Shown one piece after another: positions 6,701-51,198 of a stretch of 64,000 nt of DNA (its first letter is position 1; each line of letters starts with the position of its first letter). The position numbers and the translations under genes are program-made. This DNA is from Macrostomum hystrix (Eukaryota > Animalia > Platyhelminthes). Below the pieces are notes generated by a model that had not been told where the DNA came from, did not search any database, and worked only from the letters and a program-made list of their open reading frames with translations. Location: positions 28,830,001-28,894,000 of the forward strand of contig CATNEN010000038.1 of assembly GCA_950097015.1 (NCBI GenBank). Reading direction: 5' to 3'.

Positions 6701-9700
6701 AAGCTAGCCTGAAGGACTTTAGAAGCTGGCCTGAAGGACTTTAGAAGCTAGCCTGAAGGACTTTAGAAGCTGGCCTGAAGGACTTTAGAAGCTAGCCTGA
6801 AGGACTTTAGAAGCTGGCCTGAAGCGAACCTGAAGATTCAGACCTGAAGAAATATGGCAGTGGATCTAATTTAGTTTGGGCTAAATCGATTTGGATGCAA
6901 AATTTCAAGCATTTTCATGTTAAGCATTTAAAAAACTAACCACTGCAAGTCATGTTAGTATTCGTAAAAAGCACTTTCGCAGTATGTTAAAAATCTACTC
7001 TTCACAGAGACCAATTATGCACTGTCAGTAGCGAAAATCGTCAAAGAAAGCTTGCATTTCCTGGCTTACATTCTTTGCACGTGTCGATTATCCGAATCGT
7101 CCAGCCTTAATTTTTAATTATTCGGATCTGAATTTAATTAGTAATTTTATCCCCAAGCGAAATTTTCATTTGAAAACAAAACGCCGACTTTAAAACAAAG
7201 TTAACGTACCTCTTAACGTTAACGACCTGCGATGAGACAGTTGTCCGTTTCTCAATCCAGCCAATCACTAAGGAATTGTCCCAGGTGGTGGCACAGCTGA
7301 TAAAACACTCCAGGCTGCTCACGTACTTTACTGAAAGGTCGTTGATAGACTTTGCGATTGATTAAGGTGCTTTGTTTAATAATAATTATTATTATTGATT
7401 ACACCTGCCCCAATTGGGTCAGATGTGCAGCCGACAGCACAGCCGCAGCTATTGCGCGGCGCATCTGAAGGCTGCGTACGGCTGTTCAGTCTATGGACTG
7501 GAGGGACGCTACACTCACCTTCAGTTATCCCAGCTAATGCTGGTACCCATTTAACAGCTGGGTGAACTGAAGCAATGCAGAGCTAAGTGTCTTGCTAAAG
7601 GACACAAATTGTTCCAGTGGAGTCGGGAATCGAACCCCCGACCTTCAAGTCGTGAGTCCGATGCCGTAACCACTAGGCTACAACCTCACACTAGGCTACA
7701 CCAAATTGAGGATTTGTTTAAATATCGCTTTAATCTACCTACAGTAGAATTTCAAAGTTACTTCAAAAGTTACTGAGCGGTCCGCGCCAAGGTCCCTTAG
7801 CTCGATTCTTTGGCGGGGCCACATTCAACTTGAAATTTACGCTTTGAGAGCAGATGTGCACAGCCTGAGTGAGCATGTACCTACGCAGTATCTGTGTGTG
7901 CGTGTTTTCTCATGAGTCAGCGAATTGGGCAGAATTGCCTCCTCGCTGGCTGCGGGTCCAGTGTTACTAAATCATGTGCCATTTACGTCTTGGTTAAGAG
8001 TCCCAGTTCGCCTCATTCCACCATGGTTTAAAAGAGTGTCTATGTTTATATTCAAAGCAATTTCGTGCTTCGTAAAATAGCACAACTCACCCTGCCTGGC
8101 CCAATCAGAGTGCGCCTCGTGGCTGATAAACTTGTTCGAGTTTTTAAACTTGCCTCGCTTGATGTCATTCAGCTTCACGAACAGAGTGGTCTCTGGTGGG
8201 TGTGCCGGGGATTTATTATTAGGATCTGTCAGATTGAGGATCTGTCAGATTGAGGATCTGTCAGATTGAGGATCTGTCAGATTGAGGATCTGTCAGATTG
8301 AGGATCTGTCAGATTGAGGATCTGTCAGATTGAGGATCTGTCAGATTGAGGATCTGTCAGATTGAGGATCTGTCAGATTGAGGATCTGTCAGATTGAGGA
8401 TCTGTCAGATTGAGGATCTGTCAGATTGAGGATCTGTCAGATTGAGGATCTGTCAGATTGAGGATCTGTCAGATTGAGGATCTGTCAGATTGAGGATCTG
8501 TCAGATTGAGGATCTGTCAGATTGAGGATCTGTCAGATTGAGGATCTGTCAGATTGAGGATCTGTCAGGTTGAGGAAGTGACCAGGTCGTCAGGTCCTAA
8601 GCTCGCTCACCTTGCTTGTCCTCAGCTGGTCCAGACTGTCTCTCAAACAAATTTATCGCGGCTGACAAGAAGAACAAAGCGTTGATGCGGCCCTTGATGT
8701 CGCCCCAGCAGAGCACAGACTCGTTGGCATTGTCGGGATTGTACCTGAAACAATCAAGGTGTGTCAAGGCGTGTAGCTTAATGAAATTTAATATATTTAA
8801 TTTGAATGTCACTACTAACCAGTAGTCTAGGCAGATTGGCGAAGCGTCCAAATCTTGAACTCGATATTGGCACGAGAAGTCACTCTTCGAGCTGATGTCG
8901 TAAAATGCTGTAATGTTTGTTTGTTATTTTGAAATTTATCCGGGCGAAATTTAGAATTATTTTATTATGTTTTTTTGCATTAGAGGATTACCAATATTTT
9001 TTCTATAATTAGCACACACACTAGAAATTCCCGTCTCGTGACACCCTCGCAGCCAATCAGATTTCAAGGCCACGTGGCATTGAAGCACGCATATGGCGCA
9101 TGCTTATTGATTTGTAAATTTAACAGTAGCCACTCACCGATCTCCTTGCTAGTGAAGCCGACAGCCACTTTGCTAACATTCTGTAGTAGCACGAAGTCAG
9201 TTACCCACAGGTCGCGTTGTTTGCACGCGTCGCTGCTAGCACGAAACGTGCGAGCAACCTCTAGATCAGTGTTCATGAGACAGATGGTGCCCTCCTTGGT
9301 AAGTTATAGTAGCGATTTTAAAAACTATATAATACTATATAAATATATTATATTAAGCATCAGACCACAATTGATTTACCCTGGAAACGCTGACATATTT
9401 GTGTGAGCCGCGCAGAAAGTCGACCCGTTGAATGATGTCCTTGTGCGGCGCTGGAATCATGCGAAGATCGCGCCACTGCGGCAGCTGGGTGCTTTTCACC
9501 TTATCGTCCCGTTCGTAGAACTGCAGCAGCATGTGCTGTGCGAGCTGGTCCCAGGAGACGCTGCCCTCCTTCGATATGTCGATCTTGTCGAATAACTCTT
9601 CGTACTTTAGAGACAGGAGTTTGGTGCCAGTTTTTTAGTTAAAAAATTGTCTACAAGAACTTTCTAAAAATGATCACGTGACCATTTTGTTATAATTTTA

Positions 9701-36422: not shown

Positions 36423-39400
36423 ATGGAGCTCAGTACACAATCGATCAGCGAGTTCATTGCTTCAACAACGGCTCATGGCTTCAGTAGGCTACATCCCGCA
36501 CAGTCACTGCCCATCAAGTGCATGTGGCTGGTGTTCCTAATGGCCAGCATTGGCGGCTTCAGCTATCACATCACGCTGTTAATCTCAAACTACCTCACAA
36601 CACCTGTCTCGGCCAACATCAGTCCCGGAGCAATACCGTTCAGTACGCCAGACATCACCATCTGCAACGTCAGCCCGATCTCGTCGACCAACTACTACGA
36701 GACGGTCACTAAGCACTACGATGTGTACATGCGACTGCTGTCTGAGGCCTACTCAACCCAGAGCGTGGTTGAGAGCCACGGCTTCGGCTACAATACAGAC
36801 ATCCTGATGCAAGTTTCGCGGGACATGTTTGACTCTTCGCTGCTGCTCAATTATCTCGGTCATCGTCGGGAGTACTTTATTGTGCGCTGCCGGTACAAAG
36901 GACTTGATTGCAACTACAGGCACTTTCAGAACTTTTGGGACAGCAAATTTGGCAATTGTTTTCGATTTCAACCCTCGGCTGATCTGCTGAATGCCACCAA
37001 GGATGTCACTGAGTTCCAACTGGAGCTGGTAATTTTAAATCGAATGATAAAATCTGTATTACTAGTTAAATTATGGATTAGCAAAATATTTGTTTTCTCA
37101 AGGAAACTAATTAAAATACCCGGCTGAGATTTTAACTCCCGACTGCCCGTTTAGAAGTAAAGGCTCGAATCAAAACACAATACTCGCTCCATAGTGACCT
37201 CCTAACTAGTTTTATTTTTCTTACTGGAATGAATAATAATTCCCCATAATAAATGGGCCAGATGTCCAGCCGACAGCACAGTCGCAGCTATTGCGCGGCG
37301 CATGCGAAGGCAGCGTACGACTGTTCAGTCCATGGACTGGTGGCTGGTACCCTTTGAACAGTTGGTTGAAATGAAGCAACGTAGTGTTGAGTGCCTAGCT
37401 AAAGGACCCGAATCTTATCAGTTAAATCGGTAATTGAACCCACGACCTTTAAGTCGTGAGTCCTACGCTCACTACTAGGCCGCAAGCACTTTGCTGCAAC
37501 TCTACCAACTTTGTAAGAATTTGGAATTTACTAAAATTCGCTGAAATGTGATAAACATTCGCAGGTATTGTTCACTGATACAAACCCGGTAGTTACTCAT
37601 CCGTACAGCATGGAAGTGTACCGCATGCTAACAGCAGGTGTCACCTTCGAGGGCGAATACGACGTGTCCAAATCCGGCGGAGCGATCCTGTTCTACGGCG
37701 ACAGGGACCACTACCCAAGGGACTACATTAACTTGTCACCAGGCGTTCATTCCTACGTCGACTTTCAGATGGTGGAGCACAGGTGAGCTGATTGTGATCA
37801 TTAGTTTATACCGACTTGTGGAACAAATTGTACAAAAAAAAGAAGTATTAAAATGGACTCAATTTCTAGAAAAGTTAAGGTTTTGGGCTACATTATATAT
37901 ATGCTCTACGTCTGAGTAGGACTATGAAATGATCAATAAAGACCTTGTAGACTTTTGGGAGCTAAATGCAAAAACTAAACGATCATTATTTGAATAAGAA
38001 GTCATCAAGTATCGCATCATGCATGTGTTTTAGCCAGCATAGCTTGAGGAGAACAAGTATCATTATCTATTCATAATGGTGTCATATTGTGAGTTTCTGA
38101 CGCCATTAAAGCGTCTTTAACAAACCCTCGTCACATCCGGGGTGAACGATTTAGACAGCAAATTTAAACGGAGAGACAAGTCTAGAGAGTAAAGTGTTGA
38201 GAAATGCTTAAAATGAAAACTGTGGGATTTCGTCATTACTGGGATCATTTAGGGATCAAGTTTCACACACGAGTTTAGATTTTTTGCCCTTTAGCAAACT
38301 GAATTGACTGGAACTGAGTTTGGGGCCTTAATTGATTCAAATTTCATGTCGCCTAACTAGTGGAGAAGTTTGGGAATTAAAATTTTGTCTTCATTTAATC
38401 GGCAAGACTAAAGTAATTTGAGTACGAGCAATAGATTGCTACAAGGCTACATAAATCTAGATTTAAGCGAGATTTAGATTTCACAAAGAATTGTTTGAAG
38501 TTTGGTAATTTTACTTGCTTTCCTGGTAGTTTTCATAAACGCATTAAAGACTTTTGTAATCGAATATCCGTAATCAAAATAACGGTCTCGTATTTTATTT
38601 CTGAAGAGTTATATAATCTAACTCTTTACTGCTCGACATTTTACAATTGTATCGTCACCTCTATTGTCAAAATGTTGCATTATTTGTTGCTATGGTTACT
38701 TTAAAAACAATTTTAACAAAGTAGGAGTAGTAACTTTGCGAAATGCTGAAAAAATGAAAATCCACAGAAATATAAAAATTATGCAGTAAGTAACAATTTC
38801 CATATTTGTTATAATTCATTCACGTGAGTTATACTCGTAGTTTAAAGTTCGACATTATTTTTAATCGATACGCAGATACGTCAGTCGCAACGCAAAGGCC
38901 TGCCTTGAAGCCGGTGGTATCGTGTACTACGAAGACTCGGACAGGACGCGCCTCCGATTTCGAAAGAATCGCATCGACTGCCAGTACAGAAAGCTGCTAG
39001 AGAAGATTATTTCCGACTGTCAGTGCTTCTCCACTAGAATCGCTCCGTCATACGTTAATCTCACGGAAACTTTCAAAGAAATGCGCTGCTCCCATCTGGT
39101 TGCCAGCACAGCCACTGCCGATTTTCTTAAGCGACGCAACTGCGAACGCGATGCCATCCTGAAAAAGAGCAGCTACTTCAACCAGATGACTGACTGCCTG
39201 CCGAACTGTGCCGAGCGCATCTACACGCCCATCATCTCGATGACGACGTGGCCTCTAAATAGCTTGGCCGTTAGCTGCAAGAATAGCATCATGAATCAGA
39301 CGATTTCTAATCTGCTGGCTCACAATATCACGCCGCCAGATACATTCTATTATTTTCTCAGAAACATCACAACACCTCCAGAGGTGCAAAGAGATTTCTC

Positions 39401-39920
39401 TACTAATTTTGCACAAGTGAGCCTGGGTGAGTACACCGACTTTAGCACCCTGATGCAGGAGGTGCCGTCCTACCTAATCTTCGACTTGTTCTCGAGTATC
39501 GGTGGCATTTTGGGTCTTTATCTGGGCATGTCGCTGCTAACAGTCTGCGAGCTATTCGAATTACTATTTGTACTGGCAGCAGAGTTTCGGGCCGCCGCTC
39601 ATGGCCACAAAACTCGCCGACAGTGGCGCCGGCATGAGCACAATGGATCGAATAGTAGCGAAGCTGGTAGCTCGGTGATAAGCGTGAGTCCGCAAATCAC
39701 TATAGTGAAGAGTCTCGATTTGGGCGACAAAAGCTCCGTGATTGAAAGCGGAGAGCGAAAACAGCAGCAGGAGTCGGAGAACAAAGCCAGCTTTCCACCT
39801 GGTCGTCCGGTACGCGTTACCCCAACCACGACAGCCACGGCGGGAACGAAGCGAACCACGGAAGCGAATAAGCCGACAAAAATCGCAGCATCAGCGCGTC
39901 GGATTGATCGAGTTTGGTGA
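36423..39920 (+). CDS. DEG/ENaC (amiloride-sensitive channel family) subunit, ~622 aa
   Basis: Exons 36423-37028, 37565-37782, 38876-39920. Pre-TM1 TTAHG, PDITICN, FGNCFRF, Cys-rich thumb (DCQC...CLPNCAE), TM2 SSIGGILGLYLGMSLLTVCE. Confidence 0.92.
37250..37485 (-). mobile_element. SINE family 1 copy
   Basis: Shared tail and head motifs, in DEG/ENaC intron 1. Confidence 0.75.
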
Positions 39921-40877
39921 TACAGACGACTATAACTTAAAACTTTTTTAGAAGCTGCAGATAAAACCTATCTTTGCGAGTCGAGATCGTTATTGACTAT
40001 CACATCACAATTGCACCTTATCATTGACTAAGATCCGTGCACCGATTGTCTTGAATTAATGATTAAGCAGAGGATCAAGAATGTGGATGCAAATCCTTTT
40101 TAAAGAGATAGTTTTGAAATGCTCTTTGTTAAAAGTGGGTTTACCTGGCGTTTAGAGGCATTTCCATAAGACCCAAGAACCAAAAAACATTTGCCTAAAA
40201 TAATGTAAAACCAATAATTGAACGGCAATCTACTTTAGAAACACAATGCACACCACTCGATGCACAGACGTCTATGATATATCCGTGCACACTCTATGCA
40301 TATTGTACTCTATGCATAAGCATTCATTGCGTATTTCAGTTCGAATGGCGACAACTAACTGAAAATTGCACAAACTTTCTACTACCTTCACAAATACATA
40401 TAAACTGACAACGAACGAAAATACATACATCATTTAAAACTATCTGCGTCATTAAAGAAACAATTCGTATAAGCAAAAGATATTACCTTTTTGCAGCAAA
40501 TAGTAAGAAAAAAGAATTCTTTTTAAACGAAAAAAATATTCACTTGAAAATTTTTTTAATTTAGGCGAAAAGTACGAGCCCGCGTATATTGGAAACATAA
40601 AGTAAATAGGAACTTGCGAAAATTGTAATAATTGGATTTATAATTATAAGTGCACAGTGGGATTAAAATAAAGTAAAAAAGTACAGAACTTAAATTTACT
40701 TTAAAGGACCACCCAAGTAAATTTACTTGTGACTTGACGAAGTAAGGTTTATCGAAGGTTAACAAAAATGTGGATATCTTAAACAATCGGATATATTGCA
40801 ATGAAATGAGTAATATATTTATTCAACACGTATCATTCGACCTCCAAACGAATTCAGTAGGCCTTTATAAGCTTAGG

Positions 40878-42691
40878 CTATCGGTAACTTCCACTGACCT
40901 CTACAGTTTGGCGACGCGGCTTGCGGCCCATCGCCATGTAGAAGCAGAACTCGGCGAACTCCAGCATGGACAGCATGCTGCCACCAACGAACAGGCTGAT
41001 GAAGCCGCCAAACTCCATTGTCAGGTCCAGCAGTCGGTAGGTCAAATCCTGGTTGATCTTGGTTGACAGCAGCTCTCCAGCTCGGATCTGCACTCGCAGC
41101 AGGTTCTCAGAAACGGCTCGAACCACGGCGGACTCGGCGCTAGCCGAGCCAGTGGCCGAGCTCTCGTTGAAGAGTCTCAGCAGCCAGTCTCGTCCGGGCG
41201 TGGAGAGGTTTCGACCGGACAGCTGGGCGGAGGTCGAGGTGAGCAGCCCAGCCAGCTCAGCACTGAGGCTCTGCCTCAGCGGAGAGCGAATCGAGGACAG
41301 CTTGGGGCTGTAAGAAACTTCCTCGCAAGTGCACTTGTACTTGCAGCGCTCTAGAAGTTCTCTAAAGAAGCTGTTTGTTTCCTCTGTCAAATTTCCTGAT
41401 GAAATTTGCTGCATAAAAATTACTTTCTTTAAAATCTCGGCGTCACGCGTGTCATTAGTAAAGTAGCTGAAGTTGTACACGTTTGGTATGTCCATTTGTG
41501 TATAGGGAGTAGGCAGAATTCCAGGAATCGTGGCTCCCATACTAGAAACCGAAATGCTAGCCAACTCCTTAGCGTAGCAACCTAAAAAAAGAAATAGCAA
41601 CTAAATATTTACTTGATGACATGCAGCTGAATACTTAATTGAATTGCTACTAAGCTAAAAAACATGCCCCAATAGAAGTCGCTCGTATTTTAAGATTTGC
41701 ATGGAAATAAAACAAGGCTTGTCCTTCAAAATGAGCTTGTACCTTGTTGGCTGTATTTGTAGCTCACGGGCTTTGAAGTTGCGAGGTCCACAAACTGGAT
41801 GTCTGGCTGGTCGATCAAGCACTGGCCCTTCTCCACCGACCAGCTCGTGACCTGCATGCTCAGCTTCACGTAGTGAGTAAAGCCGGGCGCTACAGTCACC
41901 GAAGGTGTCATATCATCCGGATAGCTGTCTCTGGGAGTGAAGTACACGCGGAACCCGGACTTCAACAACACATCATAGTTTGTGAACGACAGCCCGCGGC
42001 TCTCGATTCGACCATCGTACAGCTTCAGCGACTGGTTGTACGAAGCGTCGGCGTACAGCACAATGTCCACATAAGCCAGGATGTTTCCAAGCAGATTGCG
42101 TATTGCGGTGCTGTTTGGCCTGATTGTGAAACAGTTGAGGTGCTTGAAGTGCCCGAAGCTCACTATGTCGGTGCCAAGCTCGAGCTCCTTGTTCATCGGC
42201 ATGACTCTTGCCTTCACGATCGACTGTTCCATCCGCATGCCAAAGTGCTGGCTCAAGAAGCTGCTCGGAACGCTGTTCGCGAACGCGAGCGCAACCAAGT
42301 ACGTGTTCGACACATTCACCCTGGCCAGCAGCTCTGCGATCCTCGCCACCTGGCCATCCGTGAAGTTCCTGGCTTCGGCCGGCATCAGCGACGGGTAGCT
42401 GGCGGACACCATCGGGTACGAGCAGAAGTGCACATCCGGAAACACAAACGCGACAGAGTTCGGCTCGACGGAAGTCGCAACTGGCACGTCTCGCAGCTTC
42501 ATCACGGCCAGGACGAGTTGACGACATAAAAGTGCCATGAGAGCCAGGAATGCCAGCAGCCACAGCGCCTTCAGAGCCAGGTGTCTTTCTCCGACAGTGC
42601 GAGGCAAGCCGTGAAGCTTCGTGCCTTGAACGCTCTCCTGAATGATCTGACTGCGTTCGCTGCGTCCTTCTGCGCCTGCTGTCGACGCCAT
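40878..42691 (-). CDS. DEG/ENaC-family subunit, inverted paralog A (~550 aa)
   Basis: Exons 42691-41743 and 41581-40878. TKLHG, FPDVHFC, LNCFTI, CTCEEVSY, TM2 MEFGGFISLFVGGSMLSMLEF. Confidence 0.9.
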
Positions 42692-43289
42692 TCTACGAGC
42701 TAGTTTAAAATTTTTGTTCTGAACTCTGCAGTTGGAAACGAATCTGGTAGATTTTCTTTTGCTATTTACCTGTCAGCCTTTAAAGTTGCTTCTTATACCG
42801 GTATAATAAATGTGACTGAAGCCAGGGATATATATTGCTTATGGTCTCCATTGGTAACAGCAATGCGAGACAATGCCCATTTTTTGACTAAGCCCTGTGT
42901 TGGCTAGAAGGTACTTCTGGTAGGAATTAATTTCCGACTTCCGTCATTCCTCAGTTGAGTGGCTGTAATTCAATTACTTTGCTGTGATTTCTGCTTTGCA
43001 ACCAATAATAATATGCTTATAAAGGGGTCTAGCTGCCATAATATTCCATGCCAATGAGCTCTCTAGCGAACAGTTGATGATAGTTGACCGTACTCCATTT
43101 GAATAATTCGTCCTTTAGCAAGATACTCGTGCTAAAATGATACACATTGCTTCACTTTACTCAGCTGATAAATAGGTACCAGTATGATTTAGCACTGGCA
43201 CAATATGAAACATTATTGTTATGTAATAACAATACGCAATAATTTCAGCTTGCTTCGCCAAGTACTTCATTGACAAAACCCCAGCGCTA

Positions 43290-44205
43290 CCTAAACTACA
43301 AACTACTCGTAGCTTTAAACTAAACTACAAACTACTCGTAGCTTTAAACTAAACTGCAAACTACTCGTAGCTTTTAACTAAACTACAAACTACTCGTAGC
43401 TTTAAACTAAACTACAAACTACTCCTAGCTTTAAACTAAACTACAAACTACTCGTAGCTTTAAACTAAACTACAAACTACTCGTAGCTTTAAACTAAACT
43501 ACAAACTACTCGTAGCTTTTAACTAAACTGCAAACTACTCGTAGCTTTAAACTAAACTACAAACTACTCGTAGCTTTTAACTAAACTGCAAACTACTCGT
43601 AGCTTTAAACTAAACTACAAACTACTCCTAGCTTTAAACTAAACTGCAAACTACTCGTAGCTTTCAACTGAACTACAAACTACTCGTAGCTTTAAACTAA
43701 ACTACAAACTACTCGTAGCTTTAAACTAAACTGCAAACTACTCGTAGCTTTAAACTAAACTACAAACTACTCGTAGCTTTAAACTAAACTACAAACTACT
43801 CCTAGCTTTAAACTAAACTACAAACTACTCGTAGCTTTTAACTAAACTGCAAACTACTTGTAGCTTTAAACTAAACTACAAACTACTCCTAGCTTTAAAC
43901 TAAACTGCAAACTACTCCTAGCTTTAAACTAAACTACAAACTACTCCTAGCTTTAAACTAAACTGCAAACTACTCGTAGCTTTAAACTGAACTACAAACT
44001 ACTCGTAGCTTTAAACTAAACTACAATCTACTCGTCGCTTTAAACTAAACTACAATCTACTCGTAGCTTTAAACTAAACTACAATCTACTCGTAGCTTTA
44101 AACTGAACTGCAATCTACTCGTCGCTTTAAACTAAACTGCAATCTACTCGTCGCTTTAAACTAAACTGCAAACTACTCGTCGCTTTAAACTAAACTGCAT
44201 ACTAG
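43290..44205. repeat. 29-bp minisatellite (ctaaactacaaactactcgtagctttaaa)
   Basis: Direct reading; lies in the spacer between the inverted DEG/ENaC paralogs. Confidence 0.96.
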
Positions 44206-44527
44206 TTTCTTGCGGCGGCCTGATGACTTCATGGGTGCCACTGTGGTTGAGAGCGGTTGATGTAATAGGGTTGTAATCTACTGTCTTTTAAAGGTAATTC
44301 GATAGTTATTGATTTTTTATACAATTAAAGCTACAATGCGCTGAAATCTGACGATCAATAAAAAGTATACCTTTTAAGGTTGTGCGCTGCTAAATATAAT
44401 TTTTTATATTTCTAAAATTTCCCCTAAACACAACTCACAAGCAAAAACAGCTAGACGCACAAGCTTTAACTTAAGCTTAAAGATTCGAGAATTTATTCTG
44501 CTTCCAAATGAAACAATAGAGAACCTA

Positions 44528-44838
44528 GAGAAGGTTGTAGCCTAGTGGTTAGGGCGTCGGGCTCACGACTTGAAGTTCGGGGGTTCGATTCCCGACTCGA
44601 CTGGAACAATTTGTGTCCTTAAGCAAGACCCTTAACTTTGCATTACTTCAGTTTACTAAGCTGTTAAATGGTTACCAGCATTAGCTGGAACAATTGAGGG
44701 TGGGTGTGGCGTCCGCCCAGTCCATGGACTGATCAGCTGTACGCAGCCTTCAGATGCGCCGCGCAATAGCTGCGGCTGTGCTGTCGGCTGCACATCTGGC
44801 TTAATTGGGGCAGGTGAAATAAATTATTATCAATTATT
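44528..44838 (+). mobile_element. tRNA-derived SINE family 1 (CORE-like central domain), full-length copy
   Basis: A box TAGCCTAGTGG, B box GGTTCGATTCC, CORE-like tgtgtcctt.agcaagac.cttaac...cttcagtt...ctgttaaatgg, palindrome CAGTCCATGGACTG, AT-rich tail. Many copies in the window. Confidence 0.85.
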
Positions 44839-45224
44839 AATGAAACAAACATTTTTAAAAATGTTGCACGATACGGAACTTACGTGTTTTCTCCTAGTAG
44901 TGCATCCGAATTTCCTATGTGCCCAGTGTACTTTCAGGTCAGTCAGTAAGCCTGCACTGGTCAGGAGAATGGGGGGTTTGGCGTTACGAGTAAGCTGTCT
45001 CTCCAGTTTCTGGATTCAGAACTCTATGGCTCAGGAGTCAGCGAAATGGGCAGAAATGCCTCCTCACTGGCTGCGGGTCGATAGTGTCGCGAAATGATGT
45101 GTAATTTACCTATCATTGTCGGTCACTTTAAATGCAAAAAAACACAGTTTTATCGTGCCTACCGGAAGTCATGGGCGTTATCAGTAGGACTACCAAGCCA
45201 TTTTGCCGCCCGTTTTTATACCAA

Positions 45225-45772
45225 GGGGGGGGGAATTCCCCCCCTGACAATTTTTTTTGGCAGCGCCCGAATGCTAACAGCGTTGGGTGGTTACTGATTG
45301 GTTGACAGACTAGTAGACGATGGTGTCCTGTGGTTGAGCTGCGCCTAATATTTTGGCTTGAGCATTGAAATTTGAGAAATTCGCGTCAGGGTGTCCATAG
45401 TAGCTTAGTTCCACCTATTGTAGCCCTTGAAGGTCCAGCAGTCTGTTTAGATAAAGGTAGGTGACCACCGAAGACGGAGATGATGCAGGCACACTCGGGT
45501 GACATGCTGATAAATTTTGAAGGCCTGGCAAGGCCGCACTGAGGCGCAGTGCAAATTCGTGTATAGGGGGTGTATGAATAACACTAGCTCTTATGGGAAA
45601 AAATCGGACCTTCGGCCAGAAACATTGAATATCTCGACGGTCTGAAGAGCTGGCGACTTCTTTCTTGTTTCAGAAGATGCGCAACAAAAAGTTGGCCCGT
45701 GTTCTTGAGTTTCGTGTGCTTGCAAATTGTTCCGTTCGGGTGCAGCAAAAAATTGTCAGGGGTTTCCCCCCC
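45225..45772. mobile_element. MITE with G-run/C-run terminal inverted repeats
   Basis: Left ggggggggaattcccccc-ctgacaattttttttggcagcgcccgaa is inverted relative to right ttcgggtgcagcaaaaaattgtcaggggtttccccc; ccaa on both flanks. Confidence 0.7.
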
Positions 45773-46392
45773 CCAAGGGTAGTTGTACTCTTAAATAGAC
45801 AGTTTAAGCGCGTCACATACTGGACTAATCGTCTGCGCATTGCTGCACGCGCTCCAAATGTCTATGGCCCAAGGTTAATGGTAGTTTTGCGAGACAAACA
45901 CAGCAATATAGCCGTAGACCCCAAAATGCACTCATAGACCCCAATAGATTGCCCATATTGGTATTATATTTCTGCTTTATTTTTTCTGGTTACTAATTGA
46001 TAATCAGGTTAAACTAGTAGAATAGGAACTTAAAGTTGACTATAGCTGGCTAATTGTTTTGAACATTAGTCCAATCGGCTAATTATACGTAAAAATTAAC
46101 TTTAACCTTTATCTCTAAGTAGATATGATTAATTGATATAATATAATATGCAGATTATTTGCGGATTGGGTCCACTTAGGATTTTCGAGCAAATTATTTT
46201 TTTACGAGTACTAGACAACGAAAAAGGACTATCAGGAGACTTTAAATTTGCCGAGAATCTTAAAAACATTAATGATCAGTATATATTTGACTTTAAGTCA
46301 CGAATAAAAATCGATTGATGTTTTTATTAACGTTTACATGTTTACATGAATGCCTAATACCGACCTCCTTTTATAGGATTAAGCAAATAAAC

Positions 46393-47380
46393 CTATAAAG
46401 TGGTTCGTCTGGTCATTTGGCGTGTGGCTAGTTGTGGATTCAAGTAGCACTTCTTTACCAACCTGGAGTGCCTTTCCGGTACACAATAGTAGTCACCATT
46501 ATCGCTTTGGACTGGGGAGCTGGTGACTCGCCTGTTCACCTCCAGCATCATGTCCTCGAGATGCTCAGTCTGATAGTTCTGCTCAATCACATCGCACAGG
46601 ATCTGAACGAAGACACTTCCATCTTGAGGATGTCGATATGCTCGCGAACCATCTGACGTTGGAAAGCAAAGCAGGAAGTCGCTCTCATTGGGGCAGTATT
46701 GCTCTAATGGTAGAGCTTCTGGTCCATCGTGGTGCACTGGTGATCGGTCGATGTCCATCGCGTCCCCTCGACAAGCCTGAATGAAAAATATCTTTGGCTT
46801 CATTCGTAGCTTTGGACACCTGCCAGCTTGGAGCTGTGCGACAAGATCATTGACCTTTTCTGGGCTACCATCCTGACCAAATATACAGCCTCTGTTGCCG
46901 TGCGCCATGATGAAACAGACGAAGCAGCCGTGGCTATCTTTGACGTCCTTTTTAATATCGTTAATTAGAGATATAATTTCGTGTCCAGCAAGATCTCTAT
47001 GGATGCGTACATCGAATTTCAGCTTCTTAAACAATTTCTCGATGCGGGCAACGTCATTCTCAGACCCGAGTCTCTCCGGATGTCTGGTCGAGGCGTCATA
47101 TTTGTTTATATTAATTATCAAGCAAAGGCCCTGGGGACTTGTGACCTTGTACATTTCCATATCTAGAAATAGCCCCCTGAAATTGAAAAATCATTAGTAG
47201 AAGCTTAATTAGAACCTCTTGAAAACAGACAAAAAAGAAAATATTTCAGAAAATGTTAATGCTTTACCTGACCATTTCACCACTACTTCCTGCCGATATG
47301 GAATCGTCCACACGCCTTGTACTACTAGTCCCTGCTGCAGCTCCACCGTTCTCACTTGTCAATGCACTGGAGTCACACAT
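46393..47380 (-). CDS. Caspase (peptidase C14A), short prodomain, ~298 aa
   Basis: GLCLIIN, CFIMAHG (catalytic His), KPKIFFIQACRG (catalytic Cys), DGSVFVQILC. Exons 47380-47268 (ATG at 47380) and 47176-46393. A further in-frame exon at 47559-47505 may extend the N-terminus. Confidence 0.93.
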
Positions 47381-48318
47381 GTTCACTGCTCTGCAATAAG
47401 AATGGAGTTCGTAGAGTTGGTTTACTACGAATTCAACTACTATTGAATTGTCATACTCATAGAATGAATTATTCGTAAATAGCTGGATGTGAAGCGGTTT
47501 TTACCTTGCTTGGACTGCTGCCTCTACATTTTGAACCGTGCCAGGAGTTCTGCTAGAGCCTGATGAAAAGGAATCGCAGACAGACATTGCGGTAAAACGA
47601 ACTCAAGCCAAACGAACTTCACTCTTTCTGTTTTGCTAAAAGCTGCTTCTTATACTCAGAGCTTCGCTCAAAGAATTAACTGCATTAACAAACTTCCAAA
47701 ACTATTGTACGGTGGAAACGTACATAATTGTCTGCTGAATTGCAAACTGAGAAAATTTTTCGCGTTCTAAATTCCGGCTGTAAAATATAATAAAAAAGAA
47801 TGTACAGTTTTTTATCTATACTCGCTGAATGTTATATTAAGGCTTCGTTAAAGATACAAGTACTCTAATTCGAAGGGTTCTACAACCTACCTCTCTTCTT
47901 TTTTTCTGAAAATGATAAAGCAAAATCTGATTGCCTGTTATAGGTTATTGAGCAAAACCAAACGACAGGTAATGCTAAGCAAAAAAGCTCTGTTTGCCTA
48001 GCTGCTCTGTTAAGTCCCCATACAACCATGCTGGCAAGTTAAGAGCTGTGTAAACACAAAACAGCGTCTGTTGCCATGGGGGAGTGTTTGGATAAACTCT
48101 GAATCTATACATACTCCAGGCTCTGCTTTTTCAGATTTAATAAATTAATCAACGTTGGGAAGGCTAACATAAGGGATTCTAGTTTAGCTTGGGCCGGCAC
48201 AAGCACGTTAATAAAAGTCTGTCATTCGGTTGTTCACAGCCGATACTGGACTAAACAGCAAAGTGCCGAATCTACTAGCTCTACTGAGCAAACAGAGAAA
48301 TCAATACTAGCTCGTAGA

Positions 48319-50055
48319 ATGGCCTCGACAGCAGGCGCAGAAGGACGCAGCGAACGCAGTCAGATCATTCAGGAGAGCGTTCAAGGCACGAAGCTTCACG
48401 GCTTGCCTCGCACTGTCGGAGAAAGACAACTGGCTCTGAAGGCGCTGTGGCTGCTGGCATTCCTGGCTCTCATGGCACTTTTATGTCGTCAACTCGTCCT
48501 GGCCGTGATGAAGCTGCGAGACATGCCAGTTGCGACTTCCGTCGAGCCGAACTCTGTCGCGTTTGTGTTTCCGGATGTGCACTTCTGTTCGTACCCGATG
48601 GTGTCCGCCAGCTACCCGTCGCTGATGCCGGCCGAAGCCAGGAACTTCACGGATGGCCAGGTGGCGAGGATCGCAGAGCTGCTGGCCAGGGTGAATGTGT
48701 CGAACACGTACTTGGTTGCGCTCGCGTTCACGAACAGCGTTCCGAGCAGCTTCTTGAGCCAGCACTTCGGCATGCGGATGGAACAGTCGATCGTGAAGGC
48801 AAGAGTCATGCCGATGAACAAGGAGCTCGAGCTTGGCACCGACATAGTGAGCTTCGGGCACTTCAAGCACCTCAACTGTTTCACAATCAGGCCACAGAGC
48901 ACCGCAATACGCAATCTGCTTGGAAACATCCTGGCTTATGTGGATATTGTGCTGTACGCCGACGCTTCGTACAACCAGTCGCTGAAGCTGTACGATGGTC
49001 GAATCGAGAGCCGCGGTCTGTCGTTCACAAACTATGATGTGTTGTTGAAGTCCGGGTTCCGCGTGTACTTCACTCCCAGAGACAGCTATCCGGATGATAT
49101 GACACCTTCGGTGACTGTAGCGCCCGGCTTTACTCACTACGTGAAGCTGAGCATGCAGGTCACGGGCTGGTCGGTGGAGAAGGGCCAGTGCTTGATCGGC
49201 CAGCCAGACATCCAGTTTGTGGACCTCGCAACTTCAAAGCCCGTGAGCTACAAATACAGCTTGCGAGGTAAAGCGCTTGTTAACTATTTGAAGTTCACTA
49301 AGTGACAGTTCTTAGACATTTTATCCCCCAAAATTGCTATTTTACCTTCAACAGGCTGCTTTGCAAAGGAGTTGGCGGATATATTTGCACAAAATATTGA
49401 ATCTAACTTGCCCGGAATGCTGCCGACTCCTTATTCGCAAAAGGATCTCCCAAATTTTTACAACTTTAGCTACGTCAGAAACAATGCCTCCAATGTTGAA
49501 ATAATGAACAAAGTGCTTTTTATGATGAGGATGTCTGGCGGGAATTTGACACAAGAGACAATAAATTTTATAAGTCAAGTACAGGAGCGCTGCAAGTACA
49601 AGTGCACTTGCGAGGAAGTTTCTTACAGCCCCAAGCTGTCCTCGATTCGCTCTCCGCTGAGGCAGAGCCTCAGTGCTGAGCTGGCTGGGCTGCTCACCTC
49701 GACCTCCGCCCAGCTGTCCGGTCGAAACCTCTCCACGCCCGGACGAGACTGGCTGCTGAGACTCTTCAATGAGAGCTCGGCCACCGGCTCGGCGAGCGCC
49801 GATTCCGCCATGGTTCGAGCTGTTTCTGAGAACCTGCTGCGAGTGCAGATCCGAGCTGGAGAGCTGCTGTCAACCAAGATCAACCAGGATTTGACCTACC
49901 GACTGCTGGACCTGACAATGGAGTTTGGCGGCTTCATCAGCCTGTTCGTTGGTGGCAGCATGCTGTCCATGCTGGAGTTCGCCGAGTTCTGCTTCTACAT
50001 GGCGCTGGGCCGCAAGCCGCATTCTCGGAAGGTGGAAGATGAGAGTAGCGACTAG
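48319..50055 (+). CDS. DEG/ENaC-family subunit, inverted paralog B (~549 aa)
   Basis: Exons 48319-49267 and 49355-50055. Same motifs and same intron position as paralog A. Confidence 0.9.
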
Positions 50056-50418: not shown

Positions 50419-51198
50419 TTAAAATACGGACTGGCACTCGCAAATAAAGCGCCTATTAGCGTCGCAGCTATAGTCATCAACGCCAATTGTGTGAAGCGCG
50501 TTGACTTGCACGCAGCCCTTCTGCTCCTCGGCCTGTAGACCGCTCTGCGGTTTTCCTGGCTGCCAGACATCTGCGGTGATGCTGATGTTGCAGGAGCTCC
50601 AGAACCACCCGTCTGTTACCAACTCGGAAACGGGCGACTGTCGACCACCTAGCGAGTAGCTGCACGAGGTACCGCAGGTGGAGTTTTTTATTTCCATTAA
50701 ATGTGTAGCCTCGTCTGAGTCCAGGGCGTCGGCGAATTTTGTAAGGCCAGCCTCCTGACTGCAAATATAGTTCGAATCTGTCCAGACATCAGCCTTCAAA
50801 GAAATCTTATAGGCAGTCCCAAATCTCGTGAACTCGTACTCCGATGAACACAGACGCCCTGGAGGCACGCCTGGCTGCGATTTAACGTAAATTGTTGCGA
50901 GGTGAGTGCAGCTAGCTACAGACTGCACTCGGTGGCTGCACGCGTCAAACAGGAACAACTTGCAGAAGCATGCTCCGGTACCTGCTGGTATTGCGAAAGC
51001 TTGACACTTGGCCGTATTTGCGCACTGAAAACCGCACGAAATTGGATCGCAAAGGCCCCAGGTTAGACGCACGAATTCAGAGCTGACGCAGTCGGAGCCG
51101 ATGATTTGATGAAATGTAACTCTGTGCAGATCGTTGCAGATTGCGCCAGCAACCAAAGGTAGGCCAATTAGCAGCAGAAGTGTCGCTAAACCGACCAT
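50419..51198 (-). CDS. Secreted PAN/apple-like + C-type lectin-like domain protein
   Basis: Signal peptide MVGLATLLLLIGLPLVAG; CGFQCANTAKCQAF...CKL (PAN-like); WTDSNYIC...LGG...WFWS...WQPGKPQ...C...DDYSCDANRRFICE (CTLD). Single coding exon. Confidence 0.85.
   Translation of the reverse strand: MVGLATLLLLIGLPLVAGAICNDLHRVTFHQIIGSDCVSSEFVRLTWGLCDPISCGFQCANTAKCQAFAIPAGTGACFCKLFLFDACSHRVQSVASCTHLATIYVKSQPGVPPGRLCSSEYEFTRFGTAYKISLKADVWTDSNYICSQEAGLTKFADALDSDEATHLMEIKNSTCGTSCSYSLGGRQSPVSELVTDGWFWSSCNISITADVWQPGKPQSGLQAEEQKGCVQVNALHTIGVDDYSCDANRRFICECQSVF

What the first reader, a model, noticed from the sequence alone, without database searches (positions are those of the whole stretch)
40878..50055. 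Inverted DEG/ENaC twin genes homogenised everywhere except one extracellular block
Seen: the two genes form the arms of a ~9-kb inverted duplication. Exon 1 differs at only 6 of the first 313 residues, and the stretch from ERCKYKC through TM2 differs at about 3 residues. The block between them (A 41749-41352, B 49261-49584) is different: the introns are unalignable (161 vs 87 nt) and the 76 residues at the start of exon 2 are only 38/76 identical, with no indels. Identity also stops ~15 nt upstream of the ATG and just after TM2. The homogenised parts look GC-rich and the divergent block AT-rich. Known: this block sits in the thumb region of DEG/ENaC ectodomains, which couples stimulus to gating. 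Inference: an old duplication is undergoing arm-to-arm (GC-biased) gene conversion, while selection protects a specificity module. The result would be two channels with an identical scaffold and pore but different sensing domains.
Basis: partly seen in the sequence, partly recalled or inferred. Interest (0 to 1): 0.85.

Follow-up and report, generated by a model that had tools for sequence, protein, structure and literature searches.

The report
Twin sodium-channel genes, mosaic gene conversion
Two head-to-head copies of a flatworm DEG/ENaC sodium-channel gene keep overwriting each other everywhere except the intron and the 76 codons for the outer "thumb"; it is a clean, expressed new example of a well-known process, not a new kind of thing.

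Summary
The genome matches Macrostomum hystrix by size and contig count. Genes A (42691..40878, minus) and B (48319..50055, plus) are two-exon DEG/ENaC genes.

- **Homogenised parts:** 98.7% identical over 955 nt (14 nt before the ATG to 7 nt before the exon-1 donor) and 98% over 436 nt (ERCKYKC through TM2).
- **Divergent part:** between them the introns (161 vs 87 nt) do not align. The first 76 codons of exon 2 are 38/76 identical, with saturated synonymous sites.
- **Age:** in that block A and B are no closer to each other than to the M. lignano orthologue. In exon 1, 101 of 104 sites where exactly one of the three differs group A with B.
- **No donor:** no third gene in the genome could have supplied either block.
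- **GC bias:** GC3 is 0.74-0.78 in the homogenised tracts and 0.45 in the block. Four unconverted paralogues are flat.
- **Expression:** RNA contigs show both genes expressed and spliced as modelled. Genomic contig depth fits two copies.

Best reading: an old duplicate pair under recurrent GC-biased interlocus gene conversion, with an island of divergence in the thumb. Whether selection or a simple homology barrier protects the island is unresolved. The scan noted similar mosaic inverted pairs elsewhere in this genome.

The parts
40878..42691 (-). Gene A, DEG/ENaC, 550 codons. Exon 1 is 41743-42691 (949 nt, phase 1), the intron 41582-41742 (161 nt), exon 2 40878-41581 including the stop.
   Evidence: Pfam ASC match on both exons. 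Frames and junctions. RNA contigs join 41579 to 41741 (skip of 161, GT..AG on the minus strand) in X2 and X3.
48319..50055 (+). Gene B, DEG/ENaC, 549 codons. Exon 1 is 48319-49267, the intron 49268-49354 (87 nt), exon 2 49355-50055 including the stop.
   Evidence: Pfam ASC. A 2973-nt RNA contig in X7 and contigs in X2 carry 237 letters between the two shared tracts, which equals the B block without its 87-nt intron. Their loose ends match B's 5' flank and C-terminal tail.
41750..42704 (-). Homogenised tract 1 of A. Its partner in B is 48306-49260. It runs from 14 nt before the ATG to 7 nt before the donor; 12 differences in 942 coding nt.
   Evidence: dS 0.023, GC3 0.74. Exactly two copies in the assembly. 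Genomic contig depth 146 against 71-82 for unique sequence.
48306..49260 (+). Homogenised tract 1 of B.
   Evidence: Same as for its partner. All 12 B letters sit on one RNA contig that is linked to B's 5' flank in X2.
41352..41749 (-). Divergent island of A: the last 7 nt of exon 1, the 161-nt intron, and the first 76 full codons of exon 2 (41352-41579).
   Evidence: 38/76 aa, pS 0.86, dN 0.33, GC3 0.447. Best other match in the genome is B at 53%, then 36%. Unique-depth genomic contig 41322-41779 with no difference.
49261..49584 (+). Divergent island of B: the last 7 nt of exon 1, the 87-nt intron, and the first 76 full codons of exon 2 (49357-49584).
   Evidence: Single copy in the assembly. 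59% identical to the M. lignano orthologue against 50% to A.
40916..41351 (-). Homogenised tract 2 of A (ERCKYKC through TM2 to GRKP). Its partner in B is 49585-50020.
   Evidence: dS 0.036, GC3 0.78. Two copies in the assembly.
49585..50020 (+). Homogenised tract 2 of B.
41115..41166 (-). 52-nt patch inside tract 2 that holds 6 of the tract's 9 differences. Its partner in B is 49770-49821. It is a third divergence class, which suggests conversion events of different age or extent.
   Evidence: 577 of 100000 random placements reach 6 in 52 nt. Both versions are present at equal depth, 110/110, in genomic contigs.
42705..48305 (.). Unique 5.6-kb spacer between the two start codons. It holds both diverged 5' UTRs/promoters, a 29-nt minisatellite (43291-44204) and a single-exon caspase gene (46393-47160, minus).
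   Evidence: Transcribed 5' flanks of A (42779-43084) and of B (134-458 nt upstream) are.

Best explanation
A and B are two expressed DEG/ENaC subunit genes that descend from an old duplication. By the block's protein distances, the duplication is about as old as the split between the M. hystrix and M. lignano lineages. They lie head to head, 5.6 kb apart.

Recurrent non-reciprocal exchange between them (interlocus gene conversion between inverted repeats) keeps two tracts at 98-99% identity: exon 1, and the part of exon 2 from the post-thumb Cys motif through TM2. The exchange is GC-biased and has pushed GC3 in those tracts to about 0.75.

The intron and the adjoining 76 codons, which encode the thumb helices, have escaped. 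They are now too different (39% at the DNA level, with an intron length difference) for heteroduplex to cross, so tracts stop at the same two cliffs each time.

The animal therefore makes two subunits with the same TM1, finger/palm scaffold and pore, but different thumbs and different cytoplasmic tails and UTRs.

- Shown: the mosaic, its age contrast, two copies, no third donor, the GC3 step, and expression and splicing of both genes.
- Inferred: that conversion is recurrent rather than one or two events. Also that the island began because a changed thumb in copy A (the longer branch) was favoured, and persists through lack of homology plus purifying selection on each thumb.
For: - **Mosaic:** 93 of 114 coding differences fall in 237 nt (chi-square 439, 0 of 300 shuffles).
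- **Age contrast:**
  - Exon 1: A=B differing from M. lignano at 101 sites, against 1 and 2 for the other groupings. (A,B) clade support 100/99.
  - Block: 7 (A=B) against 14 (B=Mlig) and 7 (A=Mlig). The tree is a trichotomy, with A-B path 0.82 against B-Mlig 0.60.
- **Saturation:** block pS 0.86 and unalignable introns and flanks, against dS 0.023 and 0.036 in the tracts.
- **No donor:** the next best match to either block anywhere in the 220-Mb assembly is 33-36% aa. Each shared tract has exactly two copies.
- **Tract edges:** they lie inside the CDS (-14 from the ATG; about 10 codons before the stop), which is awkward for a duplication but expected for conversion.
- **GC3:**
  - Twins: 0.74 / 0.45 / 0.75-0.78.
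  - Four paralogues with the same intron position, flat: 0.63/0.61/0.62, 0.68/0.67/0.67, 0.51/0.56/0.50, 0.51/0.59/0.61.
  - Neighbouring genes: 0.53-0.60.
- **Three divergence classes** (about 0.3%, 11% in a 52-nt patch, 39%) argue for more than one event.
- **Second pair:** another inverted DEG/ENaC pair (C14) has 1 difference in 1080 nt followed by 60-75% identity. Its GC3 is 0.78 in the homogenised part against 0.57-0.60 in the rest.
- **Independent data:**
  - Genomic contigs have 2x depth on exon 1 and 1x on the block.
  - RNA contigs from two studies carry the A and B junctions.
  - A contig from a different genotype (X7; neighbour gene 6/833 differences) is linked to the B block. It has A letters at 7-8 of the 12 exon-1 sites, B letters at 4, and 4 private changes.
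Against: - Only one M. lignano orthologue (B-like in the block) was found, so there is no second species with both copies. The block topology is unresolved (AU p 0.31 and 0.22).
- The X7 mosaic can also be explained by ancestral polymorphism, if the last homogenisation is about as old as allelic coalescence.
- Logan contigs pop bubbles, so letters on one contig are not strictly phased.
- The reference was polished with short reads (pilon; PMC10468722). This could have moved single letters between the twins, though not created 98% from about 65%.
- Nothing here demonstrates selection on the thumb. The neutral intron is just as diverged, and the island has cliff edges, not a peak. The relative-rate excess of A is not significant (14 vs 7, p 0.13-0.19).
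Confidence: 0.72

Rival explanations
1. Neutral homology barrier only. The pair is an old duplicate under conversion, but nothing about the thumb is favoured. The fastest-evolving segment of the protein happens to lie next to an intron that acquired indels. It drifted past the identity needed for heteroduplex and has been locked out since. The two thumbs need not differ in function.
For: - The block is the least conserved segment in the whole subfamily (17-32% against 41-48% in exon 1 among paralogues).
- The intron is as diverged as the coding part and differs in length.
- The island has cliff edges and a flat 39% plateau.
- The C14 pair is diverged over its whole 3' third including the TM2 region, so partial homogenisation occurs in this genome without a 'specificity module'.
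Against: - For exon 1 to have stayed convertible, conversion must have acted from early on. The 228-nt block, open to tracts coming from the 3' side, should then have been homogenised too unless such events were removed.
- B's block is kept at 59% identity to M. lignano, about as well as the rest of the protein.
- A's block keeps its length, frame, the PG.LPTPY..D.PN.YNFSY core and N-glycosylation motifs. Both are therefore constrained.
- A's branch is 2.3 times B's, which is the asymmetry expected of one copy changing function, though it is not significant.
Confidence: 0.35
2. Recent duplication plus patch replacement. One gene was duplicated in inverted orientation very recently (dS 0.02-0.04). 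In one copy the intron and thumb block were then replaced by conversion from a third, diverged paralogue.
For: - The low divergence of the tracts is of the same order as allelic divergence seen in X7.
- The family is very large (about 100 loci), so donors are plentiful in principle.
Against: - No locus in the assembly matches either block better than the twin does (53% against 36% or less).
- Flanks, UTRs, the C-terminal tail and the spacer share nothing, so the duplicated unit would have to start 14 nt before the ATG and stop 10 codons before the stop codon.
- Both blocks, not just one, have low GC3 (0.447 each) against 0.75 around them. A native block in a recently copied gene should match its surroundings, as it does in the paralogues.
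- The 52-nt patch of intermediate divergence needs yet another event.
Confidence: 0.07
3. Assembly or polishing artefact. The near-identity of the arms, or the second copy itself, was produced by collapse, false duplication or short-read polishing.
For: - The assembly was made from PacBio CLR reads with canu, haplotigs were purged, and it was polished with Arrow and pilon (PMC10468722).
- Genomic contig depth on the 3' tract is about 2.8x rather than 2x. One DNA-run contig is also listed in a row labelled with the intron-less B spacing. Both are unexplained.
Against: - Independent de Bruijn contigs of the genomic run give 1x on both unique blocks and flanks and 2x on exon 1, with both variants of the 52-nt patch at equal depth.
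- RNA contigs from two studies and from another genotype contain each block joined to the shared tracts.
- The wild B mRNA contig is 99.2% and 98.6% identical to reference A over the two tracts, independently of any polishing.
- The arms differ at 21 sites and are separated by 5.6 kb of unique DNA, which long reads span easily.
Confidence: 0.03

Closest known systems
Primate L/M (red/green) opsin genes: conversion-homogenised duplicates with a peak of divergence at the spectral-tuning sites in exon 5 (Teshima and Innan 2008, as reviewed in PMC3924837)
   Same: An old duplication looks young over most of its length because of interlocus conversion. A short segment that carries the functional difference stays diverged.
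   Different: The opsins are in tandem, and their flanking introns are homogenised, which is what points to selection. Here the pair is inverted, and the adjacent intron is as diverged as the block. The island is also a 39% plateau with cliff edges, so selection cannot be read from the pattern alone.
GOT1 paralogues of the copepod Tigriopus californicus (PMC3728101), and Drosophila duplicates surveyed by Osada and Innan (PMC2588116)
   Same: Islands of divergence persist in the face of conversion in invertebrate paralogues. Mosaic identity is used as a pointer to regions under selection.
   Different: Different gene family and taxon. Here there is in addition a 0.3 step in GC3 at the tract edges, and direct RNA evidence for both copies.
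Arm-to-arm conversion in inverted repeats and palindromes (for example human Y-chromosome palindromes and the Drosophila Hsp70 inverted pair; own knowledge, not checked here)
   Same: Inverted orientation allows intrachromosomal conversion to continue. Crossovers only invert the spacer and do not delete it.
   Different: Those arms are identical over their whole length including non-coding DNA. Here identity is confined to two coding tracts, and the spacer, UTRs and intron are unique.
Other inverted pairs in this same genome: a Cys-loop receptor pair with a divergent loop-C exon (scan note s1-850710), an Otx pair (s1-316735), and the DEG/ENaC pair at C14:608500-618499
   Same: Inverted paralogue pairs with part of the gene at 97-100% identity and part old. 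In the C14 pair I measured the same GC3 excess in the homogenised part.
   Different: In the C14 pair the diverged part is the whole 3' third and is not bracketed by a second identical tract. I did not test the two scan notes.
DEG/ENaC channels with solved structures: FaNaC (8on9, 7yvb), ASIC1a, ENaC
   Same: The AlphaFold model of the M. lignano orthologue matches these folds (Foldseek E 1.7e-12 to 1e-6). The Pfam ASC domain, the HG motif before TM1 and the GxS-type motif in TM2 are present.
   Different: Only 12-16% identical. The thumb of A, B and the M. lignano orthologue lacks the disulphide ladder of the ASIC thumb (own knowledge), and also the Cys pair that the four nearest paralogues keep in the block. 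Ligand or stimulus unknown.

Membership tests
DEG/ENaC (Pfam ASC, PF00858) | Match to the ASC profile above the curated cut-off | tested here: met
   Exon 1 of A and B scores 68.4 and 66.0 bits, exon 2 scores 45.3 and 47.1 bits (cut-off 23.6). Together they cover profile positions 3-286 and 353-455.
DEG/ENaC (Pfam ASC, PF00858) | Two transmembrane helices around a large ectodomain, an HG motif before TM1, and a G/S-x-S selectivity motif in TM2 | tested here: met
   Read directly from the translations: KLHGLPR, then ALWLLAFLALMALLCRQLVLAV (TM1), and GGFISLFVGGSMLSMLEFAEF (TM2, with GGS). The motif definitions are from my own knowledge of the family.
DEG/ENaC (Pfam ASC, PF00858) | Ectodomain fold of solved family members | tested here: met
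   Tested by proxy. The AF2 model of M. lignano orthologue P0002 (65% identical in exon 1; pLDDT 77, pTM 0.72) hits FaNaC, ASIC and ENaC chains.
DEG/ENaC (Pfam ASC, PF00858) | Forms an amiloride-sensitive cation channel | not testable with these tools
   Needs heterologous expression and electrophysiology.
Concerted evolution by interlocus gene conversion | Paralogues are closer to each other than to the orthologue in the homogenised segments | tested here: met
   Exon 1: 97% A-B against 65% to M. lignano. 3' tract: 97% against 56%. (A,B) clade support 100/99, and alternative topologies are rejected at p 0.002.
Concerted evolution by interlocus gene conversion | Another segment of the same genes keeps the old divergence | tested here: met
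   Block: 50% A-B against 59% B-Mlig. Site patterns 7/14/7. pS saturated. Introns unalignable.
Concerted evolution by interlocus gene conversion | Both copies present in a second species, with converted segments clustering by species and the island by paralogue | tested here: inconclusive
Concerted evolution by interlocus gene conversion | Exchange still going on, shown by paralogue-distinguishing sites shared or shuffled between genotypes | tested here: inconclusive
   The X7 B-linked contig carries A letters at 7-8 of 12 sites. This is compatible with ongoing exchange, but also with ancestral polymorphism, and contigs are not phased reads.
GC-biased gene conversion | GC3 raised in converted tracts relative to unconverted parts and to unconverted relatives | tested here: met
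   Twins 0.74-0.78 against 0.45 (Fisher p 2e-7 and 5e-7). Paralogues are flat at 0.50-0.68. The second pair gives 0.78 against 0.57-0.60. An excess of W-to-S substitutions was not polarised, because no outgroup DNA was available.
Selection-maintained island of divergence (Teshima-Innan type) | Divergence peak centred on functional sites, with flanking neutral sites homogenised or dN/dS above 1 | tested here: not met
   The adjacent intron is fully diverged, the island is a plateau with sharp edges, and dS is saturated so dN/dS only shows constraint (pN 0.27, pS 0.86). This does not exclude selection. It means the pattern does not demonstrate it.

The most novel reading that the evidence does not exclude
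In this self-fertilising flatworm, inverted pairs of ligand-gated or stimulus-gated channel genes (this DEG/ENaC pair, the C14 pair, and the Cys-loop pair noted by the scan) may be a regular way of making receptor diversity. GC-biased conversion between the arms would hold scaffold and pore constant for tens of millions of years, while selection keeps one sensor module different. If so, A and B are natural thumb-swap chimeras that can co-assemble, and the thumb alone sets their different stimulus sensitivity.
Probability: 0.2. Interest if true: 0.65.

Novelty: new member of a known kind. Interest (0 to 1): 0.45.

Why it matters
For evolutionary genetics this is an unusually clean case of mosaic interlocus conversion. 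It combines three things:
- tract edges resolved to a few bases;
- a 0.3 step in GC3 that ties conversion to GC bias inside single genes, in a selfer where allelic biased conversion should be weak;
- wild-worm RNA-seq already in the archives that could time the exchange.

For DEG/ENaC biology it offers a natural experiment. The two expressed subunits differ almost only in the thumb, 38 of 76 residues, against 9 differences in about 460 residues elsewhere, plus the C-terminal tail. Comparing A, B and their chimeras would test directly what the thumb contributes to gating or ligand choice in an orphan flatworm channel.

It also warns annotators that the age of such pairs is underestimated about 20-fold if it is judged from exon 1.

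Tried and rejected
- **Third-gene donor:** six-frame and DNA searches of the whole assembly with each block and each tract found no closer relative than the twin, and exactly two copies of the shared tracts. Rejected for the present genome.
- **Processed (intron-less) copy of B:** one genomic-run contig was listed with the spliced spacing, but the assembly holds one copy of the B block, with its intron. Left unexplained; probably a shared row label.
- **SL trans-splice acceptor at ACTAG|CTCGTAGAATG as the reason identity starts at -14:** RNA contigs run 134-458 nt (B) and about 390 nt (A) further upstream into unique sequence. An acceptor there is not needed, though not excluded.
- **Orthologues in other species:**
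  - Two word-index protein searches and one exhaustive HMMER search gave only M. lignano A0A1I8ICX5/A0A1I8HGB0.
- **Sequence match of the thumb to solved structures:** phmmer aligns only the TM1 region. The thumb assignment rests on the AF2 secondary-structure order, and the domain names come from my own knowledge.
- **Relative-rate test A vs B in the block:** not significant.
- **Block topology:** unresolved.
- **tRNA in the spacer:** the Rfam hit is at threshold and ARAGORN finds none.
- **Joined spliced proteins of A or B:** Exons were searched by reference. The concatenation was only a local count of difference positions.

Full report
**What is there**

The window is C38:28830001-28894000 of a 220,453,370-base assembly in 42 contigs. 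Two things point to the organism. The size and contig number equal those published for the Macrostomum hystrix SR1 assembly (PMC10468722). The only close public protein is from M. lignano. I therefore take the organism to be M. hystrix.

Two ORF pairs carry the Pfam ASC (DEG/ENaC) domain.
- Gene A is on the minus strand: exon 1 41743-42691, intron 41582-41742, exon 2 40878-41581.
- Gene B is on the plus strand: exon 1 48319-49267, intron 49268-49354, exon 2 49355-50055.

Exon 1 is 949 nt, phase 1, in both. The four nearest paralogues in the genome have the intron at the same codon. The genes are head to head, with 5.6 kb between the start codons.

**Check of the observation**

The arms found by the repeat finder and my base-by-base alignment give the following.
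- Identity begins 14 nt before the ATG.
- There are 12 differences in the first 942 coding nt, 6 of 314 residues.
- Identity ends 7 nt before the donor.
- The introns (161 vs 87 nt) are unalignable.
- The first 76 full codons of exon 2 are 38/76 identical without indel.
- From GAGCGCTGCAAG (ERCK) onward, 436-439 nt carry 9 differences.
- Everything after GRKP is unalignable: the last 10 or so codons, the UTRs and the flanks.

Nei-Gojobori estimates:

| Segment | dS | dN |
|---|---|---|
| Exon 1 | 0.023 | 0.010 |
| 3' tract | 0.036 | 0.012 |
| Block | pS 0.86 (saturated) | 0.33 |

Of 114 coding differences, 93 lie in 237 nt (maximum chi-square 439, none of 300 shuffles reaches it). The two corrections are the exact splice sites, and the fact that only about 1.4 kb per gene is repeated, not 9 kb.

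**Is it real DNA, and are both genes used?**

Logan contigs of four public runs were laid on 38700-43250.

X1 behaves as genomic DNA, since it covers the intron and intergenic DNA.
- The unique flank and the A block have depth 71-82, and shared exon 1 has 146.
- The two versions of a variable 52-nt patch have 110 each.
- This is what two real copies give.

X2, X3 and X7 behave as RNA. They have no intron or intergenic cover, and there is a poly(A) end at 40421 for the neighbouring plus-strand gene.
- Contigs in X2 and X3 join 41579 to 41741, removing exactly the 161-nt intron with GT..AG on the minus strand, and they carry the A block.
- A 2973-nt contig in X7, and contigs in X2, carry 237 letters between the two shared tracts. 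That is the B island (324 nt) minus its 87-nt intron.
- Their loose ends match B's 5' flank and B's tail.

Both genes are therefore transcribed and spliced as modelled. The assembly holds exactly two copies of each shared tract and one of the B block.

Two oddities remain. The 3' tract has about 2.8x rather than 2x depth in X1. X1 is also listed in the row whose label gives the spliced spacing.

**How old is the pair?**

The M. lignano orthologue (P0002, 461 aa) gives a yardstick.

| Segment | A-B identity | A or B to M. lignano |
|---|---|---|
| Exon 1 | 97% | 65% |
| 3' tract | 97% | 56% |
| Block | 50% | B 59%, A 50% |

Site patterns make the same point. In exon 1, 101 sites have A=B differing from M. 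lignano, against 1 and 2 for the other two groupings. In the block the counts are 7 (A=B), 14 (B=Mlig) and 7 (A=Mlig), with 17 sites where all three differ.

Trees agree.
- Exon 1: (A,B) has support 100/99, with an A-B path of 0.026 against 0.53 to M. lignano.
- Block: a trichotomy with an A-B path of 0.82 against 0.60 for B-Mlig. A's branch is 0.49 and B's is 0.21.

The block therefore says that the duplication is about as old as the hystrix-lignano split, while exon 1 looks 20 times younger. A control pair of unconverted paralogues (C25 vs C38b) shows 73/65/80% identity across the same three segments, so the block is not intrinsically that much faster.

**No third donor**

Six-frame searches of the whole assembly with either block return the twin (53%) and then 33-36%. 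The family has about 100 loci, but none could have supplied either block.

**GC bias**

| Genes | Exon 1 | Block | 3' part |
|---|---|---|---|
| Twins | 0.74 | 0.45 | 0.75-0.78 |
| C39 paralogue | 0.63 | 0.61 | 0.62 |
| C12 paralogue | 0.68 | 0.67 | 0.67 |
| C25 paralogue | 0.51 | 0.56 | 0.50 |
| C38b paralogue | 0.51 | 0.59 | 0.61 |

The twin contrast holds in both genes (Fisher p 2e-7 and 5e-7). Five other ORFs in the window have GC3 of 0.53-0.60. GC at codon positions 1 and 2 is lower in the block in all members, so only the GC3 step is informative.

A second inverted DEG/ENaC pair (C14:608500-618499) shows 1 difference in 1080 nt and then 60-75% identity. Its GC3 is 0.78 in the homogenised part and 0.57-0.60 in the rest.

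A step of this size cannot come from one event. It argues for many GC-biased exchanges over a long time.

**More than one event**

Inside the 3' tract, 6 of the 9 differences fall in 52 nt (A 41115-41166). That is 4 synonymous and 2 replacement changes, with p about 0.006. This gives three divergence classes: about 0.3%, about 11% and 39%.

X7 comes from another genotype; the neighbouring gene differs at 6 of 833 sites. The paper says wild worms were sequenced. The X7 contig linked to the B block has B letters at only 4 of the 12 exon-1 sites, A letters at 7-8, and 4 private changes. A's block is not covered in that run, so a chimeric contig is unlikely.

This fits ongoing exchange. It could also be ancestral polymorphism if the last homogenisation is as recent as allelic coalescence. 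I count it as suggestive only.

**Where the block sits in the protein**

The AF2 model of the M. lignano orthologue was built with an alignment of exon-wise references (pLDDT 77, pTM 0.72).
- It places the block as helix 306-322, a loop, then helices 354-368 and 373-386.
- These lie between strands 298-302 and 394-406.
- Foldseek matches FaNaC, ASIC1a, ASIC5 and ENaC.

A helix-loop-helix between those palm strands is the thumb (domain naming from my knowledge of the ASIC1 structure).

The twins and the M. lignano protein lack the Cys pair that the four paralogues keep in this block. Both blocks keep length, frame, the PG.LPTPY..D.PN.YNFSY core and N-glycosylation motifs, so both are constrained.

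**Mechanism and what stays open**

The best reading is recurrent, GC-biased interlocus conversion between old inverted paralogues, with tracts that stop at the two edges of an island now too diverged to pair. Inverted orientation means that crossovers would only flip the spacer.

What started the island is not settled.
- *For selection:* conversion must have acted early for exon 1 to remain convertible. Yet a 228-nt block open to tracts from the 3' side diverged. B stays ancestral-like while A is on the longer branch.
- *For a plain homology barrier:* the block is the least conserved part of the subfamily. It abuts an intron with a length difference, and the intron is as diverged as the block. 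The edges are cliffs, not a peak. The C14 pair is diverged over a whole third including TM2.

I lean slightly to selection at the origin plus a barrier now, but the data here do not show it.

**Comparison with what is known**

Islands of divergence under conversion are textbook. Examples are the L/M opsins and the Teshima-Innan model (PMC3924837), GOT1 in Tigriopus (PMC3728101) and Drosophila duplicates (PMC2588116). I found no paper linking gene conversion with DEG/ENaC genes, or GC-biased conversion with Macrostomum.

The scan itself has noted a Cys-loop receptor pair and an Otx pair with the same architecture in this genome (not tested by me). So this is a new member of a known kind, and possibly one instance of a genome-wide habit.

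**Limits**

- No orthologous DNA was available.
- Read evidence is from contigs, not raw reads.

Noticed in passing
window 36423-40421 (+): A third, distantly related DEG/ENaC gene (24% identical to A) lies tail to tail with gene A. ASC-domain ORFs are at 36423-37127 and 38922-39920. RNA contigs run from 38873 to a poly(A) end at 40421 and are spliced from an upstream exon. X7 differs from the reference at 6 of 833 sites here.
   Followed up: partly
window 43291-44204: A 29-nt minisatellite of 31.5 copies, 94% matching, with strong C-over-G skew, sits in the spacer just upstream of gene A. The C14 inverted pair also has a 21/42-nt tandem array in its spacer (L040:5550-6547).
   Followed up: no
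window 46393-47160 (-): A single-exon caspase gene (Peptidase_C14, E 4e-49, QACRG active-site motif) lies inside the spacer between the twins. It would be inverted by any crossover between the arms.
   Followed up: no
L040 (G000:C14:608500-618499), arms 1729-3088 and 7874-9233: A second inverted DEG/ENaC pair. It has 1 difference in 1080 nt, and then 60-75% identity over the 3' third. GC3 is 0.78 in the homogenised part against 0.57-0.60 in the rest. A third similar copy lies at C14:1246008-1246994.
   Followed up: partly
L041 (G000:C1:5805000-5814999); also C1:14399568 (-) and C1:14412910 (+): More very recent DEG/ENaC duplicates. One is a tandem repeat with a 6229-nt period at 98-100% identity. 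The other is an inverted pair 13 kb apart with equal search scores. The family has about 100 loci in 220 Mb.
   Followed up: no
window 40916-41351 and 41351/41750, run X1: Genomic contig depth on the 3' shared tract is 204-206 (about 2.8x) while exon 1 is 146 (2x). The DNA run is also listed in the joint row labelled '237 letters between', which is the intron-less B spacing, although the assembly has only the intron-containing B block.
   Followed up: partly
window 41352-41579 / 49357-49584, and L035-L038: A, B and the M. lignano orthologue have lost a Cys pair in the thumb block (positions aligned with LNC...SC/NC) that the four nearest paralogues keep. This lineage's thumb has one disulphide fewer.
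   Followed up: no
window 44534-44601 (+): An Rfam tRNA hit just at the gathering score (29.8 against 29 bits), but ARAGORN calls nothing. It may be a tRNA-derived element within the GC-richer 44450-45950 stretch of unknown content.
   Followed up: partly
window 50419-51198 (-): A 259-aa Cys-rich ORF with a signal-peptide-like start lies just downstream of gene B. It matches no Pfam family.
   Followed up: no
run labels X2 vs X7: X2 is labelled as a different organism, yet it is identical to the window over 1549 nt of the neighbouring gene. X7 carries the window's organism label but differs at 0.7%. The labels therefore do not track genotype here.
   Followed up: no
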